This document shows, piece by piece, positions 384 through 57,801 of a DNA stretch of 64,000 nucleotides. Each line of letters starts with the position of its first letter. Position 1 is the first letter of the stretch. Position numbers and translations under genes: made by a program. The notes beneath the pieces are model-generated. The model made no database searches, was not told where the DNA came from, and saw only the letters and a program-made list of their open reading frames with translations. The DNA lies in the NCBI GenBank assembly GCA_904063045.1, contig CAJFCJ010000007.1:62001-126000 (forward strand), read 5' to 3'. The stretch comes from Dimorphilus gyrociliatus. Taxonomy: Eukaryota > Animalia > Annelida.

Positions 384-2025
384 TTATTGGTCATATATAT
401 CAAGAATTCTTTTAGCTATTCTTAATCCAGAGATCAGAGCTCCTTCAACCCATCCCCTTATTTCGGAAGTGTGCTCACCTCCAAACCATAAATTACCATT
501 CATTGATAGAATTTGTTTTTGAATTACTTCTTGTCCAGGTTTAAATAAACCAAATGCTGATTTTTGATAAATTTCATTTTCCCAGACGTGTATTATGTAC
601 TTGGTACAATATTTTGTAAAGGAATTTCCATGAATTTCTCTTAATTCCCTAAAGGATTTAACGATAAATTCTTTTTTATGAAAATTATCGTGATAGTAGA
701 GCATTTTTACATAGAATTCAGTAGACAAACTATCCGAAGGATATACGACAAAAGTATGATTTTCTAAACGACTCAGACCACCAGTTATACCAATATCATG
801 CCATATAGGATACCTACATTTAATAGCTATTCTTGCCTCTTTAACATACGATAAAGATCTTATTGGCTCGACTTGCTTTGAAAACTGTCTGTCGAAGTTA
901 ATATATTTCGAAGCTGTTCCCGAAACAGTAACTATGACATGATCAGCTAGATATTCTATTCTTTGACAGCATATTGCGCTTTTAGACTGATTAGTAGTTA
1001 TTAAGAATTTGTTAAAAAACTTTCTAATTCCCAGAACATTAGACTCTAATTGAATTTCTTCAATAAGTTCTCTAGAGAGATATTTTACTAATTTATCATT
1101 ACCACCAATAATTTGATAGTATTTCATAGTTTTTCGCCGAAGTGCATAAGTTCTTAGATACTGAATTATGCTTCTATCTTCAAATGTGTTTAACCATATA
1201 AATTTTTTTAGATATTCAAAAGTTTCCCGATTAATTTTTCTTAAGAATATATCTTTTGTTGAATATCTATCATATATTTTAACAAATTTCCTCCAACCAA
1301 TCCTATTAATTTCGTTTAATAAAGGCTTTAAAATAAGTTTAACAATCTCTGCACTCTTCAAGAACTTATTTGAATATTCATTTCCGTGTTGGAGTATAGT
1401 GTCCAATTTTATAACTCTCTTATCAATATAAAAATAATTGTTATGATTATCTTGTCTTAACAGTCTTTTAGGTAGTTTTGTATGGTTTATTAGAATATTA
1501 ATTAATTTATGAGAAGTTGGAAATTGCCATGCTCCAAATTCAAAAGTACTATTCCAATATTTCTTCGAATAGATTCGACCACCAATTCTGTTTGATGCCT
1601 CCAGAATTTTCACCTTTAAATAGAAAGAAAATAATTACCTTGTCATCCAATTTAAGTAATTTTTTTCATAAATATTAATTATTATACCTTACAACCGTTC
1701 TTTTTTAGAGTCAGGGCGCTTATCAAGCCAGATATTCCTGCACCAACGATAATAATTTTTTTCCGGCAAACGTCATTAGATTGTTTATCCTTTAAAGTAC
1801 TCTTAAGAATTTCTTGCAACTCGCTATAGTGTTCATCTTCTTCAAGTTCAGTCATAACTGATTGGTATAAAATATCTTGAGCATTGAAATATTTTTCTTG
1901 ATTGAACGTTTTAACTGAAGTAAGAAAGCATTGAATAAAGATAAAGGATGGTATACTTTAGAATGTTATCTACCTTTGTAATAAATTAAACTACAAAGAA
2001 ATACAAGTAATTTAAACAATTCCAT
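384..2025 (-). CDS. Secreted flavin-containing amine oxidase / L-amino-acid oxidase-like protein (~502 aa, 3 exons)
   Basis: Exons 2025-1974, 1914-1688 and 1613-384 join through GT-AG introns into an open 503-codon frame. The N-terminus is signal-peptide-like (MELFKLLVFLCSLIYY). It has the Rossmann motif IIIVGAGISGL, the GG motif ILEASNRIGGR, and the C-terminal FAD motif FGGEHTS..GWVEGALISG. Confidence 0.9.
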
Positions 2026-10771: not shown

Positions 10772-13700
10772 ATGAATGTGTGTCGATGGCAGTTTCTGGT
10801 GCTCTGCTTCCTTGTTAGACTTAATTATCAATCTTCATTGGCTCAAGTCTATATTGGTAATATTAAAACTTTACTTGTTTTTCATTAATTATTAGTAGTA
10901 ACTTTTTATTATTAATTTTTTATAATTTGAACAGGAGGTATATTTGACAACGATAATTACATAAATATTTTTAAAAAGGCCATTGAATATGTTAATTATC
11001 GAAAAATCTTCTCACCCGATTATATTTTATTACCTTACGTTAATAAAACTGGACCATTGGCAAGTTTTGAAAGTATGCAATTAGGTAAGCTTATGAATTA
11101 TTAATTTGTATATACTTTAGTTAAATTCTTAGATTCTTTATTAGTCTTTTAGGTTTAATATTATCTTAAATCATTTAGTTAATATTTAAAATTATTCGTA
11201 TATGTTTTTGGATAAATTATGATAATTAAATAGCTTCGTATTAATTCGTTTTTTCAGTTTGCGAACAAGCCGAATTCGGAGTTATAGCCATCGTTGGTCC
11301 AATTAGTTCAACACCAACAGCCGCAATATCTCCGTTAACCAGCAAATTTGAGATACCTCAGTTAGCCCCAGCGGCAACCAATCCCCTATTAAGTGAGGAA
11401 AATCTATTTGTTTTATAAAATTTTTATGTATTATTCATACAAACTAGGTAGACGATCGATTATCGTATTGTTATCCATGGAACGTTGAAGGGTTTTTTGC
11501 CGTTCCATTAATTCATTAAGGCAGTTTTTCGGTGCGTGTAAACTGCAAATCGAATAAAGTTAGGATGATGCTAAGCCTTTTTTCTTTCCTCTTCCCCATC
11601 GAAAATACCAAAACTATATAAGATCATAAAAAATTCATATTAAAGCGGAATGTAGTGTATATTCAGACTTTTCTATTATAAAAAAGTGATTTATTGTCTT
11701 ATTTTCTGACTTAACTCATCATTATTTTATTTGAAAATTATAGCTTATTGCTTTTAAAAACGACATTTTGCTACTTTATATACTTCATTAATATTCATAT
11801 TTATTACTTTATTATATTCTCTGTTTGTTATTATATAGTTTTCTTTTATACATCTATAAAATTAATATAGGATAATAGATTTTAAACTCTACTAATTTAT
11901 TATATACTAATTTACATATGCAAATTTATTAATTTTTCTTTATTATTTAATTATTTAAGATTTAGGAATTTACTTTATATCTATTACGCAAACCTTCCTA
12001 GAAGTTATTATTAAAAGTCACAAATACATGTTTATTGATATATCATAGTACTAGAGTCGTATGAAATATTTATGTATTCAATGCAATTTGATACTCATTA
12101 AATAATTACTGTAGTTAAACAATGTCAGTTAAACTGTTACTTTAATGATATAACAATTAATCTAGATAATAAAGACCTTCACCGTTTTTTGATACGAATG
12201 CTTGCACCCGATTCCGTTCAATCTGCGGCGTTAATTGATCTTGTATCGAATTTTGAATGGACTAACTTGGCAATTTTAACGTCCGATACCGATTACGGTA
12301 TTAATGGTTTAATACAATTTCAAGAGGGAGCCGCTAAGAAAGGTTGGAAAATTGCTAGCGTTCAGCAATTTTCCACTTCTAACGACATTCAAAACGTGGA
12401 TGCTACCGAACAATTACAAAACATTAAAAATATTGGTATTCGTGTTATTATTTTGAACTGTTTGGACGTTTTTGGTGAAGTTATTCTTAAGCAAGCCGAA
12501 AATTTAGGTATGACTGAAAATGGATGGGCTTGGATAGTTACGGATGGTATAACAGGAACGGTATATTATTAAGTTATATTTAAAAGCTCTAGGCATAAAA
12601 ATACTTTCTTGTTACTTGTTTTGAATAGAATTTTGGAACGGAAAAGAATATTCCAAACTATATGAGAGGCTTAATAGGAACCAGACCTTCTTTTGGTCAA
12701 GGTATACTTAACAGAGACTTTCAAACATTTCTTGTTCCCGGCTCTATAAACGTAAATAAACATTATTAGCAGCTTATAATAACATATTAATAACATAAAA
12801 ACTTAAACGTTTCATTTTAATAATCAATAGGCCTACAGTTCAAAAATAGCGGATGCAGTATTAGCAGTAGCTTACGGTTTACATAAAGCTTCACAAAGTA
12901 AATCCAATCTTGAATTCCCAAAGAATTTATCCTGCAATACAGCATCTTTTTGGGAGGATGGTCAATTTCTTTTAGATAGCATTAAAAGAGTAAGTAATTC
13001 ACATAATTTAATTATATGCTAATTTCACTCTTTTAAACTTAATACTATTAAAAAGTTAAACGATGCTGGAATATCTTCGAGCATACAATTTAATGAAAAT
13101 GGCGGTCCTCTTTCTGTACAATATGATATTGTCAATATGAAACTTGATGGGTGGAATGAGGTAAATGGCTTCTTTCTCTTTTTTAACTTGCACTTAATAC
13201 ACAATTATAGATGACAAAAACAAATATGATTCTTTCATGAATTAATAATAAATAGTCATTAGAGAGGATTTACTTGAAGTTTATATAAACAATACATTCT
13301 AACATTTTAATAGGTTGGAACATGGACCCCAAATGAAGGATTACATTTACGGAATCGTCAAGATATTCGATTTCATGGAGGATCCGAAATTGTTTTAGAT
13401 GAAATAAGTCATTTAGTTAATAGAACAATAAGAGTTGTTTCCATAAGAGAGGATCCTTTTGTTATGCACTTAAGTGATGATATTCAATTGGGTTCTATTC
13501 TAACTCCTAACAATACCGAAGGTTTCTATAAAAAGATTTGTAAAAGCTATTAGAAATTTTAAAACCGAAACATTTTGGCACTCAATAGGTTATTGCATAG
13601 ATTTATTAGAGAGGCTTTCGAAAGATATCGGCTTCAAGTATCACATGTACAATGTACCTGATGGGAATTTTGGCGCAAAAGATTCCAAAACGAGACAATG

Positions 13701-16353
13701 GAATGGAATGGTTAAAGAGTTAGTTGAGAGAGTAGGCACCAATTTACAACTTTAGTTTTTTTTTCTATTTAATTAGAATACGTATTTTTTCATTTTTTTA
13801 AACTAGAAAGCCGATATGGCTGTTGCTAGTCTAACTATTAGTTATGTTAGAGAAAAGGATATTGACTTTACAAAGCCTTATTTAGATCTTGGTGCAACCT
13901 TTGTCATGAAAGTATATTAGAATTTCATATAGCGTGAATTGTCTTTATTCAATAGTCTGTTTTTTTAAAAGACACCTAAACCGGAGGCTGCACGACCATT
14001 CAAATTCCTCGATCCGTTTACAAGTGAATTATGGTTGTTCATTGTAGTAACGGCTCTTATTATTGGTATATATTTATCATTAATTGATAAATTAAGTCCA
14101 TTCGCCAGACATGGGGCATTCATTCATACGCATGGACCAAATCAAGAGGATTTGTAATGATTTAATAATTCATATAATTCAGCTATAAACATACATTTAT
14201 TCTTATTTATTTAAGATCTATGGCATCTCAAGTTGAGTATAAAAAATTTAAAAGAATGAAACACGAAGCAACTCATGAATTGAACGCGACAAATGCTACA
14301 TGGTTTTCAATTGCGTCACTTTTGCAACAAGGTGGAGAGATTTATCCGACGTCTTTATCAGGTTAAATACAATATACTTTCTTTAAAAAATTATAAATAC
14401 AATAATATTTATTGTTCTTCAGGAAGAATAACTGCTGTTTTATGGTGGATGTTAGTTGTTATTATTGTGTCTACATACACAGCCAATCTGGCAGCCTTTT
14501 TAACCGCCTCCAGAACAAAAACCAATATAAATAGCATAGAAGATCTGGCTGCTCAGAGTGATATCAAATACGGTATGAGTAAATGAGTAACTTATATTAT
14601 TTCATTGTGTTTATAGTCTAAAAAACTCGAAAGGATACAGTTCGTTTACCTCAGCCATTAACCTACAATACCATGTTTTAAACAGTTCATTCTTAATTGC
14701 TATCTATTGTTCAATCATTATAAAACTCATTTAATGAATAATGATTGGGAAAGGCTCTGACTTTTGTTATTACCGCGCATCGATTCTTCTCTATCAGTTG
14801 AATTAAGTAATTCTCTTCTTAGGCCTATTTCTATCCAACAATTACACTAATCTATATTTTACTTAGTAATTATTCCTTTCTAAAGCTTTCAACACGGAAA
14901 AATATTTTGTTTTTAAAAGTTAACATCTAGTTGTTTTTAATAGCGTACTTTTCGATTTCTCTTTTAGGGACAGTGGTTTACAGCGCTCCTTATCAATTCT
15001 TGATGGACAGTCAAATAAGCTTGTATAAAGATATGGCAAATACCATGACAACTAAAAAGACTCTAGTATCTTCAACGGCTGAAGGATTTGATAAGGCTAG
15101 AAAAGAGAATTTTGCATTTATATGGGATTCGGCCGTTCTTGAGTACGCCGTTGAACAAGAACCATGTCATACATTGCGCAGTATTGACAAACTCTTTGGA
15201 CTAATAGGGTTGGTATCAGAATAAGAATTATGAGTAAAACTTTATAGTTTAATAAGGATTCTCTTGTTTTTGTTTGCTTTTTTTCATCAGATATGGATTT
15301 GGTTTACAAAAAAGTTCTCCTTATCAAAAAGAACTATCGGCACACATCTTACGATTAAGGGAGGCAGGCTATTTAGAAGAATTAAAAAATAAATGGTTTG
15401 TTGAGAGAGGTCAGTGTGGTTCTTCAGGCACAGTTGCCTCATCTACTTCTAGCGTTATTGAGGGACAATTAGACATCGACCATATGTCGGGTAACATGTT
15501 TATTTTTTTACAGTTTGAAGGTAGAATTTAGGTATACGAGTTTATTTTTCCAGGTGTTTTTTATATTATATATGGTGGAATCGTTTTGGGTTTAATCGCA
15601 TGTGTCATTGAATGGTTAATTGCTTCACTTGCAGCGGTTGATAAATACGATGAGACTGTACTAATTTAGATATTATAAACTTAAGAAAGGCAACTAATCT
15701 TTATATTTCTTAGAAACCTCAAACTTTGGTGAATTCAATAAAAAAGAGATTGTCGAGGCTGAGGGCAGATTTTAGTGTAGGTTGGCTTCCCCCTCCTGTC
15801 CCTTGGTGTTGTCCTAAATCAGCTGCAGAATTTGAAGAACACGTATTCCCGCCTTCAAGGTTAGTTACTGTCAGGTAATAAGTAAACTAATATATCAAAT
15901 TAATCAATACCTTTCAGGAGAATGTCAAAGTCCTCTCATCAAGATCTTCACGATGGAAATGGAGTAAGTCAATTTCGTCTTTCCAGTAAGTCTGCATCTT
16001 TGAGAAGCCGGTAAGAATATATATACAGTATATATATATATACATACATCTACTGTATATTAAATAATTTGTTGACAAATTAATAAAATAACTTTATAGT
16101 CGAACTGAATCACAAACTAATCTCATACCCGATCAACCTCCATCTATCGGAAGAAAAGTTGATCCGAGAATTGCTGAATCTATATTAAATTCGTTTAAAG
16201 GTAGGGATAGTGGCAATAATTATTAAAGTCATATTTGTTTTACTAGCTACTCTTTATATTTTTGCAGACGATTCGAAAGAAAACAATACGAATGGTAATA
16301 TCTCTTCCTCACCAAAATCAAATTTAAACACAGAAACGTATTTTGTATATTAA
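10772..16353 (+). CDS. Ionotropic glutamate receptor subunit (non-NMDA pore; delta/AKDF/epsilon-like, class unresolved)
   Basis: About 20 exons spliced in frame (first 10772-10856, 10935-11084, 11258-11392, 12166-...). It has a signal peptide and a LIVBP-type ATD. S1 reads KADMAVASLTISYVREKDIDFTKPY, the M2 pore WFSIASLLQQG, M3 STYTANLAAFLT, S2 YGTV..AFIWDSAVLEY..PC..YGFGLQKSSPY, and M4 SGVFYIIYGGIVLG. The last exon is ambiguous (see findings). Confidence 0.93.
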
Positions 16354-17532
16354 GGCAAAAGTGTACGATTATCAAATAGCAATCCATAGAAAGTGTATTA
16401 CATATGTATTTATATTGGTATATATATGTTAATAGACTGCTAAAAAGTATACACAACGATGTTTATCTACAAAAAGAAAATGCTTTCAATAAACAACAAA
16501 TCTGTACAGAAATTGATCTCAGTTTTAATCAATACAGAAAGAGAACGACTATAACAATAGCTAGTTGTATATATTTTATTCTAGGAAGTAGGTCTACAAC
16601 TTAAACTATTGTATTTAGTGTGATATTTCTGTTATTTCTGTTTTATATATTGAAGTAATTTGAAGAGTATATTTGTATGGTTCAAGCAATATTGTTCTCA
16701 ATAAATTTTACTTGTTTCATTCATATAAAGAAGCATTTTCAATATGAAAACTGTATATAGTGTTTAAACTTTTTCATTATTCCTATTATGGCATATACTG
16801 CATATATGCTGCATATAGTAAATACAGTATAATACGATATAGTATAGAGTATAGGAGTATTCTTTTAGCTGCACCAACCTATTAATTGAATGTTTACTTT
16901 AAAATATTAAGTTATATATATATATATATAAATTTACTTTTAAGTCATTTAAGTTGATTTTAAAACGTCTCGAATGTATTAAAAAAGACTGAAGTTAGTA
17001 TTAAAAAAAAGAGAAGTGGATGTGATGTTTCTCGAGGCAGTGAAAATTACTATACTCCCTCATGATTGGTAATTATTAATAGACATTGTATAAAGAAGGT
17101 ACATTTTTTTTTCGACCAAGTTTAAAGAGTTCTTGCAATAAGTACATCAATATGACGAACCTTAAGTAAAGAAATACTCTCTACTATTTATAGGCTATAT
17201 TACATAGGCCCTAATATAGTTTGTTCTTATACCTTTCGTAGCTTTTTATTGATATAATATGGAGTAATATTTATCATCGACGCAGTGATTGAAAGGAATT
17301 TTTACAGGACAGATCTTCCTCCCATAACTTTTGCTCTTTGGAGATAAATTACCAGCCATTGTTATTGAACATGGTCATGTACATTATAAAAATAGATATG
17401 TTCACAATTTGTTCTTTATTTAAAGACAGGAAATTGAATAAATGTTTATAATTTCTAAAATTTTTCATTTTGTTATATCATTTATAGCCGAATAAAATTT
17501 GATAAGAGAAAGGACTGCCAGAACAAAGGAGT

Positions 17533-18985
17533 ATGGATAAACTATTTACGATTTTAGCTGATATATCAGACGCTAGGAAAGGTGGTGGCGATAGTTTTAG
17601 CGATCGATTGAGTAGTAGATATACTGTTTTCTTATTAATTATATTTTCGGTTATTGTTACAACGAGGCATATTGTTGGTAGCCCAATTTCTTGCTGGTGT
17701 CCTCCAGTTTTTACTTCAAGCCATATAGATTATACCAATAAAGTTTGTTGGACAACAAATACATTTTATTTACCTGTTTCTGAAGATCATTTAATTCCTG
17801 ATGAAAATAAGATAGACAAAAGAATTGGATACTATCAATGGGTTTCCCTCATTCTATGCTGTGAAGCTGTGTTCTTTTATCTGCCGAGACCATTATGGAT
17901 CGCACTTAGTAAAAAATCAGGCATCGAAATTTCGACACTTATCGATGCAGCAATCGAGTGCGAAAAATCTCTTTCGAACATGGAGAAGACAAAGCGCTAT
18001 ATAATTAAGATAGCAAGTAAATTTCTTCAGAAAGTTAGCAGAAAGCATATGACTACTTCATCGTGTAGATGGATCATGTGGAGATTCTATGGCCATTATT
18101 TGACAATCTTATACAATTGTTTTAAGATTATCTACTTGTTAAATGTTGTTGTTCAACTTCAATTGTTAAATTTCTTTTTAGGAACTGATTATACCATGTA
18201 CGGATTGAATACAATGTCAAATATCATCTTTAGAGGACAATGGGGACTATCAAAAACATTTCCAAGAGTTACTATGTGCGATTTTAATATAAGAATTATA
18301 GGAAATGTTCAAAGACATATCGTTCAGTGTACCCTTCCAATCAATATGTTTAATGAAAAAATTTTTCTAGTCATTTGGTTCTGGCTTGTTTTTGTTGCTA
18401 TAGTGACAGCTGCTAGTTTAATTCTATCATTAATGGTAAGTTAACAAAAAGAAAGCAAGACTATTAGATTATAAATGATTCAACTCTTTAGTTAATTTTT
18501 AAATAGTTATATAAAGCTGGGGTCTTTAAATTTTCCACTTTCAGAGTTTACTTCAAAGTGAGGACTACGTAAAAACGAGACTGATAACTCTTAAAGAGTA
18601 TCGAGGGAAATGGGCTACTAAATGTAATGTTAAACATTTTTCTCAACATTATTTAAGAAGCGATGGTCTCTTTATTCTTCGAATTTTGGCCAAAAATACA
18701 AATGATTTACTTGCATCTGAAATTTTAATTGGACTTTGGAAAGAATACCAAAAAGAAAGACAAGATATTTATACAATGAATAAATACGAATTACAAGTAA
18801 TGGATATTACGTTACATGAACTCTCTCAGGATCCTGCAACAAAGCTGCCTACCTTAGAGTTTGATCGTACAGATTCAGAACATGATAACAGAATAAAAGA
18901 TGAATGCGAAACTCAGGAAGAAGAAAAACAACAACAACAAGAACAAAACGAAATAGAAGAGAAAGAAAGAGAAGATGAAATGTAA
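17533..18985 (+). CDS. Innexin (invertebrate gap-junction protein), ~447 aa, 2 exons
   Basis: Exons 17533-18435 and 18545-18985 join in phase 0. It has DRLSSRYT, ISCWCP, YYQWV, FPRVTMCDF and QCTLPINMFNEKIF, with two Cys in each extracellular loop and an acidic/poly-Q tail. Confidence 0.95.
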
Positions 18986-25274: not shown

Positions 25275-28200
25275 CTATAAACAACTTTCATCCACTTCTT
25301 TTCCCGAAGAAGCTGGTAATCTGTTATGACTCCTTGACGTTGCACGACTAGAGCTATTTTCGCTAGACTCTTCCATAATCTTTCGTAATTCTTTTGAATA
25401 CTTGTGTAAATCGGTATTTTGATATTTACCGTCCCTGATAATCTTTGCGCAATTTTTACAAAGAGTACCATCAAATTTGTTGGTGGCATTTGAATAATGG
25501 TAATTGGCGTATGACAGTTTAGTCGTTGCTGTTTGAGAGGAGTTAGCACAATTTCTATAGCGAGTTTGATGAGTTGTTGGGTATTTCTGTTGATTTCTTA
25601 CAGAATTCTCGCAACATGGGCAAAATTTTTTCAGCATTTTACTACTGAAAAGCACATATATCCATGGATTTACGCAAGCGTTGAAATTTCCCAATAATAC
25701 GCACACAATGAAAGCTTTTTCTGTACGGAGAATAATAATAATAATAAATATACATTCTTAAAGAATTCTATTAGGCCTATATACTATAGTTGTTTTTAAA
25801 CCTAACTTTTAAATTAATTTGCATATACTTGAAGATAAAAGAATAAAATCTAGTTAATTTTGATTTGATAGAATAAAAGATAAAATATTAAAAAAACAAA
25901 TATAAGGATGAAACGGAGACAAAGACAGTAAAAGAGAGAGAGAGCCGAATTTCATGAAAAACAATACTGTTAATTAATACTTATCTTTTATCAAAAGTGT
26001 CAAACTAAATAAACAAATCACTTTTTTATATTTAAGTTGATATACTAGCAAGCGTCTACGCCATCTTTGGGATGTTTTACTTATCAGTTATATTAAAAAG
26101 AATTAGGCGAAACGGTAATTCTCTTTTTTTTTGTTTCACTTGATTAAACTTACAGTTTGAATAATTGTGTAATTAAATCAAAGGCCCTTCATTAAGAATG
26201 TACTCAAAGTATAATAAAGTATGAATGTTATAAAGCTTCTTCGTCAGCGCTTATAGAAAGAGTTAAATTTGTACGATACTTACCACCAATTATCTCCCAT
26301 TTCGGAGCGATAATCCAAATTAGATGTGTTGCAAAAAATGGACCCCAACACACCAAATAGGTCAGGCAGACGACAATTGCTAATTTAATCGTCTTCAACT
26401 TCGCTTTAGACATAGCTAAATTGCTGTTTTTACGAACTTCCTGAACGGAATCGCACAAACTGCAATTTACTCGGCCCTTGGTTATCACTGATATATGACC
26501 CGTTCCGTTAAACTTGTATACAACTGTACCGCAAGCCAATTTTTGAGGATCATTCTTCCAGATTGTATATCCGATTCTTCCATAAAAGTAGACAAAAGTG
26601 AAAAATGGAATGACATAAATTGTAACAAAAAATAAGCAAGTATATATAGCCACATTTCTATTTGCAACATGATTTCCCCCAAAGTTTGCTTTGCACGTGT
26701 TTTTTATGTCAGGATCCGTAGACCAGATAAACAGTTGCGGTAAAGATAAGAGTCCAGCCGGAATCCACGGTAAAATTATCATCTTAAACCGATTTTCGGC
26801 AGAAGATAGCTTTTTTAAGGGTCGACATAAAGCCATATAACGGTCATATCCGATAGTAACCAAAATAAATGAGCTTAGAAACATTGATAGTGTTGTCATG
26901 TACTTAAAGTATGAGCCAACTAAATGAATTATGCGTTAAAACGAATGGTTGAGTCTTAATAAAACAGTAGAATATTTTATAGTTTAAACGTTTGTTTATA
27001 GAATAATCAATTATCATGTCGTCAAAATTTCCCTATTTTCCCACAGCGTTTAGATGTTTCTTAATTTTTGTTTTTTTTTTATATATTCCATTAATTAGGC
27101 ATAGTAAACTACAAAAATGATATTCTTGTACGATATTTAATAATTGATATGTTATTTTTGTTAAGGGTAAGTAATATAACACCTAAGGCAATACGTTTTT
27201 GTATTTTCATATTCGTTTTCATGTTCATTTACAGTTTTGGGATAAGCCATTATCACGCTTGATTAATACTCTCACGAGGTGTTTTCCTTTAATTCCAACG
27301 ACAAAGCATAAATTCCCTCTTACTCACTCGCACACTCGCCCACTTTCCATCTCTGACAATATCTTCTCTCTCGTCTCCCTTCCCCCCCTCTCTCTCTCTC
27401 TTTTATCCTGTACTTCTTTCCCCGCTGTTTTATGCTCATTTATCTACTTCTATTTTAACCTTGCTCGTTACTTCCTGAAAATTTTTTCCCCTTTCTCTGA
27501 CTATCTTATAACTATATAACGAAAAACAGATAAGACAAATATTTTAATTAAGCATATATAAAGATAATTTGTAATTTTGCGGGAGAATAAGAAATATCTT
27601 CATCTCAAGTTTTCATATATAATAACTGGATATTTTTGCCATTTCCCTTTTCACGAGAAATATCGTGAAGTATAATGAAACACTACAGTCTACTATTCAA
27701 CTTTTTATCAACGAACCATTAGACATTCACCTACAAACAATATTTGTCTATTCGTCTGTCACTTTATTATTGAAAAGAAAAACATCTCATTTCGTTCTTT
27801 GTTGTCAGAAATGAAAAAAGTTGTAGAAAATGAGTAACGTGTGCTGCAAAATCTCAATTTTTCACCTAAGAAATACTCGACTAAAAGAAAGGGCAAAAAA
27901 GGTAATAATAACTTTATTTAAATAATGAAATTCTTTTATTCTAACAAAAAAAAAGTAGTCTAATTTTATATTAAGACCAAAAGAAATATAGACAAAGAGA
28001 CAAGATGAGAGAGAATGAGTTAATTCTTAGTTAAAGGGACCAGAAGCGGTTATTTAGTACAACTATTAATGTATACTAATATATATATATATACTTAAAG
28101 GTGCATATAGACTCTCTGAATTAGAAATCATCAGTACTTCAACAAAAAAGCAAGTATGTAAATCTATAGAAGAAAGCTATTATCTCACCATACTACATAT

Positions 28201-56746: not shown

Positions 56747-57801
56747 ATGAACAATTCTACGCTTAATGAAAAAGATAATGTATATCAACATCCCATGCCA
56801 TTAATTTTACGCGCTTTTCTTACGAGTTTAGTAGCCGTTCTATTGGTTGTTTGCAACATTTTTAGTATGAACGTTTTGGCAATGACCAAACAAATTCCAA
56901 AAATTTCCAGAATGTGTCTTATTAACTTGGCATTTGCTGATTGTATGCTGGGTCTTATTTCGTGCGCACCTTCAGTACCGTCATCTGTAACTGGAACTTG
57001 GTTATTTGGAGAAGTGTTTTGTCAAATTTCTGGAATGAACTTATGCGCAAACGCTACAGTATCAATTTGGAGCGTCTTATTAGTATCAATAGATCGCTAT
57101 TTCGCTATTTTACACCCAATGAAGTTAGTAAAATTGTTTTACTGTCTGATAATGTTACATAAGATGTTAATTTTAATAGATACAGAGATATAATTACTGA
57201 AAAACGTTTACGAATTACAATCGGCTTTATGTGGCTGGGAGCTTACGGTTTATTCGTTTTACCAGTTCTCCTTAGTAAGAGATTTATTTATTATATATAC
57301 TCACCAAAGGAAATTGTATGTGGAGATTTTTGGCAATTTGCTTGGTTCGGTATTATGGCTGTCGTATCTGTTCCTGTTCTAACATCAATTGGACTTTTAT
57401 ATTGTACGATTAGCATTGTTCTTCATTTGAGAGCACATAAAAATCAAATAAGCGATGGTTCAAAAGCATCGGATGGAGCTTCTAAAAGAAATATCAAAGC
57501 TATCAAATTGTTAGTCATAACAGCATCAGCCTATTATTTAGCTTGGATGCCATATGCAATTCATTTATTTATTGTCTTAATACCAAAGGATCCTCCTTTC
57601 GTCCACCCTGTGCTCAAATTTTGTCTTTTATGGACTGGAATGTCAAACAGTTTTACAAATGTGTTAATTTACTTGTCAGTTTACGCTGCCTTCAGACATA
57701 ATGGACTAATCCTTATAAATAAAGTAACATGTAAATTATGCCTTGGCAAAATTATTGAAAAAAGCCATCAAAGTACTCTGAATTCAACAGCAACAGGATA
57801 A
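56747..57801 (+). CDS. Class A orphan GPCR, GPR21/GPR52-like (332 aa, 2 exons)
   Basis: Exons 56747-57123 and 57180-57801 give 333 codons. It has NLAFAD, FCQISG..VSIDRYFAILHPMKY, AWMPY and WTGMSNSFTNVLIY. It lacks Asp3.32 and Lys7.43, and has Val instead of Pro in NPxxY. Confidence 0.8.

What the first reader, a model, noticed from the sequence alone, without database searches (positions are those of the whole stretch)
13600..15210. iGluR with a non-NMDA QQG pore but a GluN1/GluD-type ligand pocket: candidate glycine/D-serine/GABA-gated cation channel
Seen: S2 contains AFIWDSAVLEY (15114-15146) and YGTVVYSAPYQF, S1 has DGNFG and ASLTISYVRE, the pore is LLQQG (14325-14333), and M3 is STYTANLAAF. 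Established: GluA2 binds glutamate via G653-S654-T655 and E705. GluN1 has AFIWDSAVLE (W731/D732) and F484, which exclude glutamate and favour glycine. GluD has GTVxDSAxY and WD. As I recall, some invertebrate delta-type receptors are GABA-gated. Here the 653-655 equivalents are S-A-P (no Thr), position 705 is Asp preceded by Trp, and the E402-equivalent (IREDPFV) is kept. Inference: this is not a glutamate receptor in function but a possibly uncharacterised small-amino-acid or GABA-gated excitatory channel.
Basis: partly seen in the sequence, partly recalled or inferred. Interest (0 to 1): 0.72.

Follow-up and report, generated by a model that had tools for sequence, protein, structure and literature searches.

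The report
Annelid epsilon-type glutamate-receptor channel, glycine-like pocket
This is an intact, conserved gene of the small marine worm Dimorphilus gyrociliatus for an "epsilon"-class glutamate-receptor-type ion channel whose binding pocket matches a relative shown to be opened by glycine rather than glutamate; the class is already described, so it is a new, untested member, not a new kind of receptor.

Summary
Every quoted motif is present and belongs to one 20-exon gene on the + strand (window 10772-16353, 1018 aa). It encodes a complete iGluR with signal peptide, ATD, S1, M1-M3, S2, M4 and tail.

The organism is Dimorphilus gyrociliatus. The public model DgyrCDS5632 is this gene wrongly fused to the downstream innexin.

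The pocket is not the glutamate type: S-A-P replaces G-S-T, and W-D replaces L-E. Among solved structures, that W-D segment matches only GluD1, GluD2 and GluN1.

The gene is neither delta-like nor NMDA-like. It falls with annelid and nemertean sequences (support 100/99). That group joins the amphioxus Epsilon receptors GluE1-GluE8 (100/99). An AU test rejects grouping it with AMPA/kainate (p = 2e-5).

Amphioxus GluE1 (S-Q-P, W-D) is a published glycine-gated, inwardly rectifying cation channel. Epsilon genes in annelids are also already reported.

An ortholog contig shows strong purifying selection (dN/dS about 0.05) and keeps every pocket residue.

The most likely function is a glycine-preferring excitatory channel, but ligand choice switches often within Epsilon, so this needs recording. 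Expression was not shown here. The gene is a new member of a known kind.

The parts
10772..16353 (+). Whole coding region of the iGluR gene: 20 exons, 1018 aa. Exons: 10772-10856, 10935-11084, 11258-11392, 12166-12560, 12629-12751, 12831-12989, 13056-13160, 13314-13521, 13589-13731, 13807-13911, 13972-14153, 14216-14361, 14423-14572, 14968-15208, 15291-15490, 15554-15657, 15714-15859, 15918-16010, 16100-16200, 16268-16353.
   Evidence: Model built from frames and GT-AG sites. The first 17 exons match P0157 (DgyrCDS5632) apart from one micro-exon. The last three exons and the stop are conserved in ortholog contig L001.
10772..10846 (+). Probable signal peptide (aa 1-25, MNVCRWQFLVLCFLVRLNYQSSLAQ)
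   Evidence: Hydrophobic N-terminus followed by the family-typical IGGIF start of the amino-terminal domain. Read from the sequence; not tested with a predictor.
10847..13421 (+). Amino-terminal domain (ATD), exons 1-8 in part
   Evidence: Pfam PF01094 ANF_receptor, 1.5e-26 on exon 4. The stretch ATNPLL..LIRMLAPDSVQSAALIDLV lines up without gaps with the Epsilon ATD block TDPTL..YLLRMSAPDSVQSRALVDLV of amphioxus GluE1-4.
13422..13911 (+). LBD segment S1. Contains E430 (13449-13451), F481 in DGNFG (13660-13674), and S509, T511 and R516 in ASLTISYVRE (13825-13854).
   Evidence: Pfam PF10613 on exons 9 and 10; alignment to rat GluA2.
14026..14085 (+). M1 transmembrane helix
   Evidence: Position after FKFLDPF and a helix in the AlphaFold model.
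14095..14300 (+). Extended M1-M2 intracellular loop, spliced across intron 14154-14215. The span from FLDPF to the Q/R site is 86 residues, against 69 in rat GluA2.
   Evidence: An insertion in this loop is the feature that eLife 2018 names as distinguishing Epsilon proteins (PMC6307864).
14301..14348 (+). Pore loop M2, WFSIASLLQQGGEIYP. Q634 (14325-14327) is the Q/R/N site and E638 is the +4 acidic residue.
   Evidence: Pfam PF00060; alignment to GluA2 FMQQGCD.
14428..14505 (+). M3 helix with the gating motif STYTANLAAF (14470-14499)
14968..15490 (+). LBD segment S2 (exons 14-15). Contains the alpha-F motif S701-A702-P703 (14982-14990), the beta10/alpha-I motif W748-D749 (15123-15128) within AFIWDSAVLEY (15114-15146), the disulfide cysteines C762 and C818, and Y777 (the GluA2 Y732 equivalent).
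15556..15624 (+). M4 transmembrane helix
15625..16353 (+). Cytoplasmic tail, ending ...NLNTETYFVY with the stop at 16351-16353
   Evidence: The three terminal exons and the stop are conserved in the ortholog L001. The public annotation instead splices on into the innexin gene.
11393..11520 (+). Conserved start of intron 3. It holds the 36-nt micro-exon used in the public annotation, which is probably not coding.
   Evidence: 88% identical to ortholog L001. In the ortholog the micro-exon carries an in-frame TGA and a GC in place of the GT donor. The 12 extra residues would break the gap-free family alignment.

Best explanation
The locus is the single-copy Dimorphilus gyrociliatus gene for a full-length Epsilon-subfamily ionotropic glutamate receptor subunit.

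Shown here:
- The domain order is complete.
- R516 and D749, which clamp the alpha-carboxyl and alpha-amino groups of an amino-acid ligand, are intact.
- The SYTANLAAF gate and a Q-Q-G-G-E pore are intact.
- The gene is under strong purifying selection.
- It sits in a spiralian clade that is sister to amphioxus GluE1-GluE8.

Inferred:
- Subunits form tetramers that make a ligand-gated, non-selective cation channel.
- Because of Q634 and E638, the channel is expected to be calcium-permeable, blocked by polyamines and inwardly rectifying.
- Ser701 in place of Gly, Pro703 in place of Thr, and the bulky Trp748 before Asp749 shrink the side-chain cavity. The preferred agonist is therefore most likely a small amino acid. 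Glycine is the best guess, by analogy with amphioxus GluE1 (S-Q-P, W-D), which is gated by glycine and not by glutamate.
- If so, the receptor would give depolarising responses to glycine in this worm.
For: Gene and species:
- Clean 20-exon GT-AG model.
- It matches DgyrCDS5632 over its first 17 exons, apart from one annotated micro-exon.
- Pfam ATD, LBD and channel domains are present.
- The AlphaFold model of LBD plus TMD has mean pLDDT 85.7 and matches AMPA/kainate LBD-TMD structures.

Selection:
- Ortholog contig L001 has the same exon structure and 88% amino-acid identity.
- pN is 0.075 and pS 0.68, giving dN/dS about 0.05 over 858 codons, with every pocket and pore motif kept.

Family:
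- The closest labelled relatives are amphioxus GluE1, E2, E3 and E4. I identified them by matching their N-terminal sequence to the labelled alignment of eLife 2018.
- In the careful ML tree, Dimorphilus + Tubulanus + Lineus + Owenia has support 100/99, and this group plus amphioxus GluE also 100/99.
- An AU test rejects union with the AMPA/kainate clade, p = 2e-5.
- The extended M1-M2 loop is present.

Ligand:
- GluE1 is glycine-selective, with S653 and W704, and rectifies inwardly (PMC6307864).
- In the alignment of tested receptors, W-D occurs in glycine-selective receptors and in the GABA-preferring starfish delta receptor, but is not among the motifs listed for glutamate-selective ones (PMC13648236).
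- The S653G + I655T swap converts a placozoan Epsilon receptor from glycine to glutamate (PMC12226733).
Against: - No recording exists for this protein or for any protostome Epsilon receptor in the papers I could search.
- Ligand choice is labile in the sister clade. Close amphioxus paralogues are gated by glycine/alanine, GABA or glutamate. Pocket mutations often fail to switch selectivity as predicted (PMC13648236).
- A Nematostella Epsilon receptor with S-Q-P responded weakly to glutamate and aspartate and not to glycine.
- The hinge residue is Tyr777 here, like glutamate-type receptors. GluE1 has Phe at this position.
- Expression was not shown. The one sequencing run found laid no contigs on the gene.
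- No verified Delta, Phi, GluN1 or ctenophore sequences could be put into my tree.
Confidence: 0.6

Rival explanations
1. It is an Epsilon receptor, but its best agonist is GABA. That would make it an excitatory GABA receptor, like starfish and acoel delta receptors or amphioxus GluE8.
For: - The starfish delta receptor has S-S-L plus W-D and prefers GABA. Its conserved lower-lobe Asp binds the amine of GABA (PMC10861852; PMC13648236).
- An amphioxus Epsilon paralogue in the sister clade is GABA-selective.
Against: - The GABA-selective Epsilon receptor has a different pocket (Y-A-T, A-D).
- The nearest tested pocket match (GluE1: S-Q-P, W-D) is glycine-selective. That study tested alanine, D-serine, glutamate and aspartate but did not report a GABA test.
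Confidence: 0.13
2. It is an Epsilon receptor that is still gated by glutamate or aspartate despite the S-A-P / W-D pocket.
For: - Nematostella 5500937 (S-Q-P) gave small glutamate and aspartate currents and no glycine current.
- Tyr at the 732-equivalent position is the glutamate-type residue.
- A Y-to-S change at position 653 in amphioxus GluE6 increased glutamate selectivity.
Against: - W-D is not among the beta10/alpha-I motifs listed for glutamate-selective receptors.
- Adding Trp at this position lowered glutamate potency and raised glycine potency.
- There is no Thr at 655 to bind the gamma-carboxylate.
Confidence: 0.13
3. It is a subunit that does not gate on its own. It would be either an obligate partner in heteromers, for instance with the second S-A-P / W-D paralogue on contig C6, or a receptor with a mainly non-channel role, as proposed for vertebrate delta receptors.
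For: - Several invertebrate iGluRs gave no currents as homomers, for example oyster GluD and amphioxus GluE7.
- Dimorphilus has a second iGluR with the same pocket motifs (L009).
Against: - The gate, pore and ligand-clamping residues are all canonical and under purifying selection.
- GluE1 works as a homomer.
Confidence: 0.1
4. It is a delta-type (AKDF) or NMDA-type receptor, as the pocket motifs alone suggest.
For: The AFIWDSAVLEY window matches only GluD1, GluD2 and GluN1 among solved structures. The S2 exon's best solved match is GluD1.
Against: - Over the full length, GluA and GluK chains score 341-361 bits and fill the whole top-60 list, with no GluD or GluN chain among them.
- The amphioxus relatives do not match the labelled GluD, GluF, GluK or GluA sequences; they match GluE1-4.
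- Tree and AU test.
- The pore is Q-Q-G, not the NMDA asparagine type.
Confidence: 0.03

Closest known systems
Amphioxus (Branchiostoma lanceolatum) GluE1, an Epsilon-subfamily glycine-gated iGluR (Ramos-Vicente et al. 2018, PMC6307864)
   Same: - Same subfamily in my tree (100/99); 47-48% identity over LBD and TMD.
- Same architecture, including the long M1-M2 loop.
- Ser at 653, Pro at 655 and Trp-Asp at 704-705.
- Phe at the 450 position and Ser at the 478 position.
- Arg485 equivalent kept, and an acidic residue at +4 in the pore.
   Different: - The middle alpha-F residue is Ala here and Gln in GluE1.
- The hinge residue is Tyr777 here and Phe in GluE1.
- In my alignment the GluE1 orthologs have F-Q where this protein has Q-Q at the Q/R site.
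- It comes from a protostome and is untested.
Spiralian Epsilon homologues: Tubulanus polymorphus P0179, Lineus longissimus P0184, Owenia fusiformis P0004, P0181 and P0183. Capitella teleta Epsilon genes are reported in PMC12226733.
   Same: - They are its nearest relatives, 45-52% identical over LBD and TMD, in a clade with support 100/99.
- Tubulanus shares the exact S-A-P plus W-D pocket and the Q-Q-G-G pore.
   Different: - Owenia paralogues vary at the first two alpha-F positions (A-S-P, T-S-P, A-A-P) and at the Q/R site (H or L).
- Lineus has S-A-M and T-D.
- None has been functionally characterised in the papers I could search.
Vertebrate GluN1 and GluD1/GluD2 ligand-binding domains (glycine / D-serine binders), and the starfish GABA-gated delta receptor (PMC10861852)
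   Same: The lower-lobe Trp-Asp segment and a Ser-x-non-polar motif on helix F. This gives motif-level identity with AFIWDSAVLE.
   Different: - They belong to different subfamilies (NMDA and AKDF-delta).
- No GluD or GluN chain is among the top 60 full-length solved-structure matches, which are all AMPA or kainate chains.
- The NMDA pore differs.
- Pro at position 655 is an Epsilon-typical feature.
Trichoplax GluE1alphaA, a placozoan Epsilon receptor gated by glycine, alanine, serine and valine (PMC12226733)
   Same: Same Epsilon subfamily. It has Ser653 with a non-polar residue at 655, and the acidic +4 pore residue that governs polyamine block.
   Different: The Trichoplax receptor has S-S-I, Phe732 and an unusual Ser at the Q/R/N site. 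This protein has S-A-P, Tyr and Gln.

Membership tests
Ionotropic glutamate receptor superfamily | ATD + bipartite LBD (S1, S2) interrupted by M1, the pore loop and M3, followed by M4 | tested here: met
   Pfam PF01094, PF10613 and PF00060 on the exons. Full-length alignment to GluA and GluK chains, E = 1e-106. AlphaFold model with pLDDT 85.7 matching LBD-TMD structures.
Ionotropic glutamate receptor superfamily | SYTANLAAF gating motif; Arg485 and an acidic residue at 705 that clamp an amino-acid ligand; the S2 disulfide | tested here: met
   STYTANLAAF, R516, D749, C762 and C818.
Epsilon subfamily (GluE) | Phylogenetic placement with named Epsilon receptors, apart from AKDF and NMDA | tested here: met
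   Clade with amphioxus GluE1-E8, support 100/99. These sequences were identified as GluE1-4 against the labelled eLife alignment. An AU test rejects union with the AMPA/kainate clade, p = 2e-5. Caveat: the tree contains no verified Delta, Phi, GluN1 or ctenophore sequences.
Epsilon subfamily (GluE) | Insertion in the intracellular M1-M2 loop (named in PMC6307864 as the one noticeable distinction) | tested here: met
   86 residues from FLDPF to the Q/R site, against 69 in rat GluA2. GluE1 has 82, GluE3 94, Trichoplax 87. GluE2 and GluE4 have no clear insertion, so the feature is not universal.
Glycine-selective iGluRs (functional class) | Ser at 653, a non-polar residue at 655, and Trp-Asp (or a similar bulky residue plus an acidic one) at 704-705 | tested here: met
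   S701, P703 and W748-D749. The rule comes from PMC6307864 and PMC12226733. It is a predictor with known exceptions.
Glycine-selective iGluRs (functional class) | Currents evoked by glycine and not by glutamate | not testable with these tools
   Requires electrophysiology.
Delta class (GluD, within AKDF) | Placement with GluD1 and GluD2, and best similarity to them | tested here: not met
   GluD chains are absent from the top 60 full-length matches, which are all GluA or GluK. The amphioxus relatives do not match the labelled GluD alpha or beta sequences. The gene falls outside the AKDF clade. This test is indirect, because no delta sequence was in the tree.
Phi class (GluF, within AKDF) | Placement with amphioxus, hemichordate and echinoderm GluF; no Gln at position 586 | tested here: not met
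   The relatives do not match labelled GluF1 or GluF2. Gln is present at the 586 equivalent. The gene falls outside AKDF.
NMDA subfamily | Asn-type pore (N / N+1 site) and placement with GluN subunits | tested here: not met
   The pore is Q-Q-G-G-E. The Dimorphilus GluN2-type genes (L012, confirmed against solved GluN2 structures) form a distant clade.

The most novel reading that the evidence does not exclude
This gene and its Tubulanus, Lineus and Owenia relatives would represent a spiralian-wide clade of Epsilon receptors that are glycine-gated, calcium-permeable cation channels. Fast excitatory glycine signalling through iGluRs would then exist in protostome nervous systems, where no Epsilon receptor has been recorded from in the papers I could search. 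Dimorphilus, with its tiny genome and small nervous system, would be a tractable animal in which to test that role.
Probability: 0.4. Interest if true: 0.5.

Novelty: new member of a known kind. Interest (0 to 1): 0.3.

Why it matters
Epsilon receptors are the least studied branch of the iGluR family. They are absent from vertebrates and from the classical model invertebrates. An early survey reported them as lost in protostomes, and later work found them in the annelid Capitella by phylogeny alone.

This locus supplies a corrected full-length sequence of a conserved annelid Epsilon gene. Its pocket is nearly that of the only bilaterian Epsilon receptor known to be glycine-selective. Expressing it would test two things:
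- whether the sequence rule (Ser653, non-polar 655, Trp-Asp 704-705) predicts the ligand outside chordates;
- whether excitatory glycine receptors of this type operate in protostomes.

The work also corrects a public gene model that fuses a receptor to an innexin.

Tried and rejected
1. Delta-receptor reading. This was my first guess from the Q-Q-G-G-E pore and the W-D motif. I rejected it after the full-length match list, the mapping of amphioxus relatives to GluE and not GluD or GluF, and the tree and AU test.
2. Phi-class reading. The taxon spread of the relatives looked like Phi. Rejected for the same reasons.
3. Fetching named GluD and GluN1 references. I used my last word-index search on the 101-aa S2 region. 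It returned only 3 proteins, so my trees contain no verified Delta, Phi, GluN1 or ctenophore sequences.
4. Labelling Dimorphilus paralogues through solved structures. Two calls had thresholds that were too strict and returned nothing. L008 scored about equally against kainate, delta and AMPA chains, so I left it as 'AKDF-type'.
5. Expression and splice evidence. The run search found one run of unrecorded type holding 44% of the sampled words, and laying it placed no contigs. This shows nothing either way.
6. My first gene model ended at a stop at 15876-15878. The ortholog showed that this lies in an intron and that three further exons follow.
7. The annotated 12-residue micro-exon and the fusion to the innexin are not supported.
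8. Supplementary files of the 2024 PNAS and 2026 Biochemistry papers held nothing on annelid sequences.
9. Structure search of the model only returned AMPA/kainate LBD-TMD structures, which says nothing about the ligand. Docking was not possible with these tools.

Full report
**What is in the sequence**

The window is AT-rich (about 28% G+C). Around the finding it carries a multi-exon eukaryotic gene on the + strand. Three-frame translation and enumeration of in-frame GT-AG junctions gave a first model of 17 exons. Pfam finds ANF_receptor on the large ATD exon, Lig_chan-Glu_bd on the two S1 exons and Lig_chan on the pore and M3 exons.

AFIWDSAVLEY lies at 15114-15146 as stated.

**Organism and gene model**

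I tested that. A word-index search with an amphioxus relative returned DgyrCDS5632 of D. gyrociliatus (P0157, 1412 aa, with iGluR and innexin Pfam domains). My model matches it at 925 of 926 aligned residues, apart from one 12-residue gap.

The annotation differs from my final model in two ways:
- It inserts a 36-nt micro-exon from intron 3.
- It splices the receptor's tail into the neighbouring innexin gene.

A 5.9-kb contig from another sequencing project (L001) carries the ortholog with the same exon structure. It shows three things:
- Three further C-terminal exons follow exon 17 and end at a conserved stop after ...TETYFVY.
- The micro-exon has an in-frame TGA and no GT donor in the ortholog.
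- Its 12 residues would interrupt an otherwise gap-free match to the Epsilon ATD block.

The innexin has its own ATG at 17533, and its Pfam profile starts at position 1. The final model therefore has 20 exons, spans 10772-16353 and encodes 1018 aa.

**Is it a working gene?**

Between the window and the ortholog, 858 aligned codons are 88% identical at the protein level. pN is 0.075 and pS is 0.68, so dN/dS is about 0.05, although dS is near saturation. Every pocket, pore and gate motif is unchanged.

An AlphaFold model of the LBD-TMD part, built with 33 homologues, has mean pLDDT 85.7. Its best structural matches are AMPA and kainate LBD-TMD structures.

The gene is single-copy. The best paralogues in the genome are about 40% identical. 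I could not show expression: the one public run found laid no contigs on the gene.

**Which family?**

Over the full length, the best solved-structure matches are GluA4 and GluA2 (about 361-353 bits) and GluK1 and GluK2 (about 350-345 bits). No GluD or GluN chain is in the top 60.

The profile-free search with the ATD exon and the two useful word-index searches returned these relatives at 36-52% identity:
- annelid (Owenia);
- nemertean (Tubulanus, Lineus);
- amphioxus;
- hemichordate;
- crinoid;
- cnidarian;
- placozoan.

None of them is named delta.

To label the amphioxus relatives, I compared their N-termini with the labelled alignment in the supplement of Ramos-Vicente et al. 2018. They correspond to GluE1 (P0151-P0155), GluE2 (P0005), GluE3 (P0007) and GluE4 (P0156). 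They do not correspond to the GluD, GluF, GluK or GluA sequences of Branchiostoma belcheri.

I built a careful maximum-likelihood tree of 38 sequences. It included vertebrate AMPA receptors, insect kainate-type receptors, Dimorphilus's own AMPA-like, kainate-like and GluN2-type genes (the last confirmed) and a plant outgroup.

| Group | UFBoot / SH-aLRT |
|---|---|
| Dimorphilus + Tubulanus + Lineus + Owenia | 100 / 99 |
| That group + amphioxus GluE1-E8 | 100 / 99 |
| AMPA/kainate clade, separate | 100 / 99 |

Forcing the spiralian group together with the AMPA/kainate clade costs 41 log-likelihood units and is rejected (AU p = 2e-5). I named that group only after seeing the tree.

The M1-M2 loop is about 17 residues longer than in GluA2. 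This is the feature that paper gives for Epsilon proteins.

So this is an Epsilon-subfamily receptor. The main limit is that I could not bring verified Delta, Phi, GluN1 or ctenophore sequences into the tree.

**The pocket and pore**

Alignment to rat GluA2 gives the following.

| GluA2 position | GluA2 residue | This protein |
|---|---|---|
| 402 | Glu | E430 |
| 450 | Tyr | F481 |
| 478 | Pro | S509 |
| 480 | Thr | T511 |
| 485 | Arg | R516 |
| 653-655 | G-S-T | S701-A702-P703 |
| 704-705 | L-E | W748-D749 |
| 732 | Tyr | Y777 |
| 586 | Gln | Q634 |
| 590 | Asp | E638 |

A 21-residue window around W-D matches only GluD1, GluD2 and GluN1 among the 60 solved-structure matches listed.

The same combination is the common state of this Epsilon group:
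- GluE1 and GluE2 have S-Q-P plus W-D.
- GluE3 has S-G-P plus W-D.
- Tubulanus has S-A-P plus W-D.
- Hemichordate, crinoid and cnidarian relatives have S-Q-P, mostly with W-D.

A second Dimorphilus gene (L009, contig C6) also has S-A-P plus W-D, but sits in another clade.

**What is known about such pockets**

- Amphioxus GluE1, with Ser653 and Trp704, forms homotetramers gated by glycine. Glutamate and aspartate gave no response, and alanine and D-serine very little. It rectifies inwardly (PMC6307864).
- In a placozoan Epsilon receptor, S653G plus I655T (plus F732Y) converts glycine selectivity to glutamate selectivity. The acidic +4 pore residue is needed for polyamine regulation (PMC12226733).
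- In a 2026 survey, W-D was listed among glycine-selective receptors and occurs in the GABA-preferring starfish delta receptor. It was not listed among glutamate-selective ones. Adding Trp at that position raised glycine potency and lowered glutamate potency (PMC13648236).

Against a confident call:
- The same survey shows that three close amphioxus Epsilon paralogues prefer glycine/alanine, GABA or glutamate.
- Its mutations often did not switch ligands as expected.
- A Nematostella Epsilon receptor with S-Q-P responded, weakly, to glutamate and aspartate but not to glycine.
- The Tyr at position 777 here is the glutamate-type hinge residue.

**Verdict on mechanism**

I take the protein to be a subunit of a tetrameric, ligand-gated cation channel. 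Its preferred agonist is most likely glycine, at about one chance in two. GABA, glutamate/aspartate, and 'silent as a homomer' are the alternatives. A calcium-permeable, polyamine-sensitive pore is inferred from Q634 and E638.

**Novelty**

The Epsilon subfamily, its glycine-gated members and its presence in annelids are all published. Capitella is covered in PMC12226733. The 2018 survey had reported Epsilon as lost in protostomes. I found no recording from any protostome Epsilon receptor in the searchable literature.

The finding is therefore a correct and useful reading of a pocket, attached to the wrong relatives. It describes a new, untested member of a known kind.

The scan's earlier notes on this genome concern other iGluR-derived genes on other contigs, not this locus.

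Noticed in passing
window 15860-18444: The public protein DgyrCDS5632 (P0157, 1412 aa) is a fusion of two genes. The receptor ends at a conserved stop at 16351-16353. The innexin starts at its own ATG at 17533, with its Pfam profile matched from position 1.
   Followed up: yes
window 11393-11520 (start of intron 3); L001:503-640: This intronic stretch is 88% identical between Dimorphilus and the ortholog contig, more than the flanking exons. It contains the annotated 36-nt micro-exon, which is not coding in the ortholog (in-frame TGA, GC in place of the GT donor). It may be a conserved splicing or regulatory element; its role is unknown.
   Followed up: partly
G000:C6:1245500-1249500 (locus L009): A second Dimorphilus iGluR gene has the same S-A-P and W-D pocket motifs and an M-Q-Q-G pore. 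It falls in a different clade, together with hemichordate, crinoid, horseshoe-crab and Lineus sequences. It is a possible partner subunit.
   Followed up: partly
G000:C8:430500-434000 (locus L008): An AKDF-type Dimorphilus iGluR has YGTVRDSDV and FLWDNTVL motifs, which are delta-like on their face, and an unusual S-G-G pore. It scores about equally against kainate, delta and AMPA solved structures, so its class is unresolved.
   Followed up: partly
P0151 and P0152 (amphioxus GluE1 orthologs), pore loop: In my alignment these sequences read L-L-F-Q-G-G-D, with Phe opposite GluA2 Gln586. The 2018 paper states that GluE1 has Gln at 586. This is either an alignment shift of one residue or a difference between sequences.
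   Followed up: no
window 384-1613 (-), 26228-26899 (-), 57229-57801 (+): Other genes in the window: a flavin amine oxidase ORF and two rhodopsin-type GPCR ORFs.
   Followed up: no
L001, L002, L003 (Logan contigs of SRR23372229, SRR23372231, SRR23372216): Three runs of one series hold a genomic ortholog that is about 88% identical in protein. They probably come from a closely related dinophilid worm; the species was not identified.
   Followed up: partly
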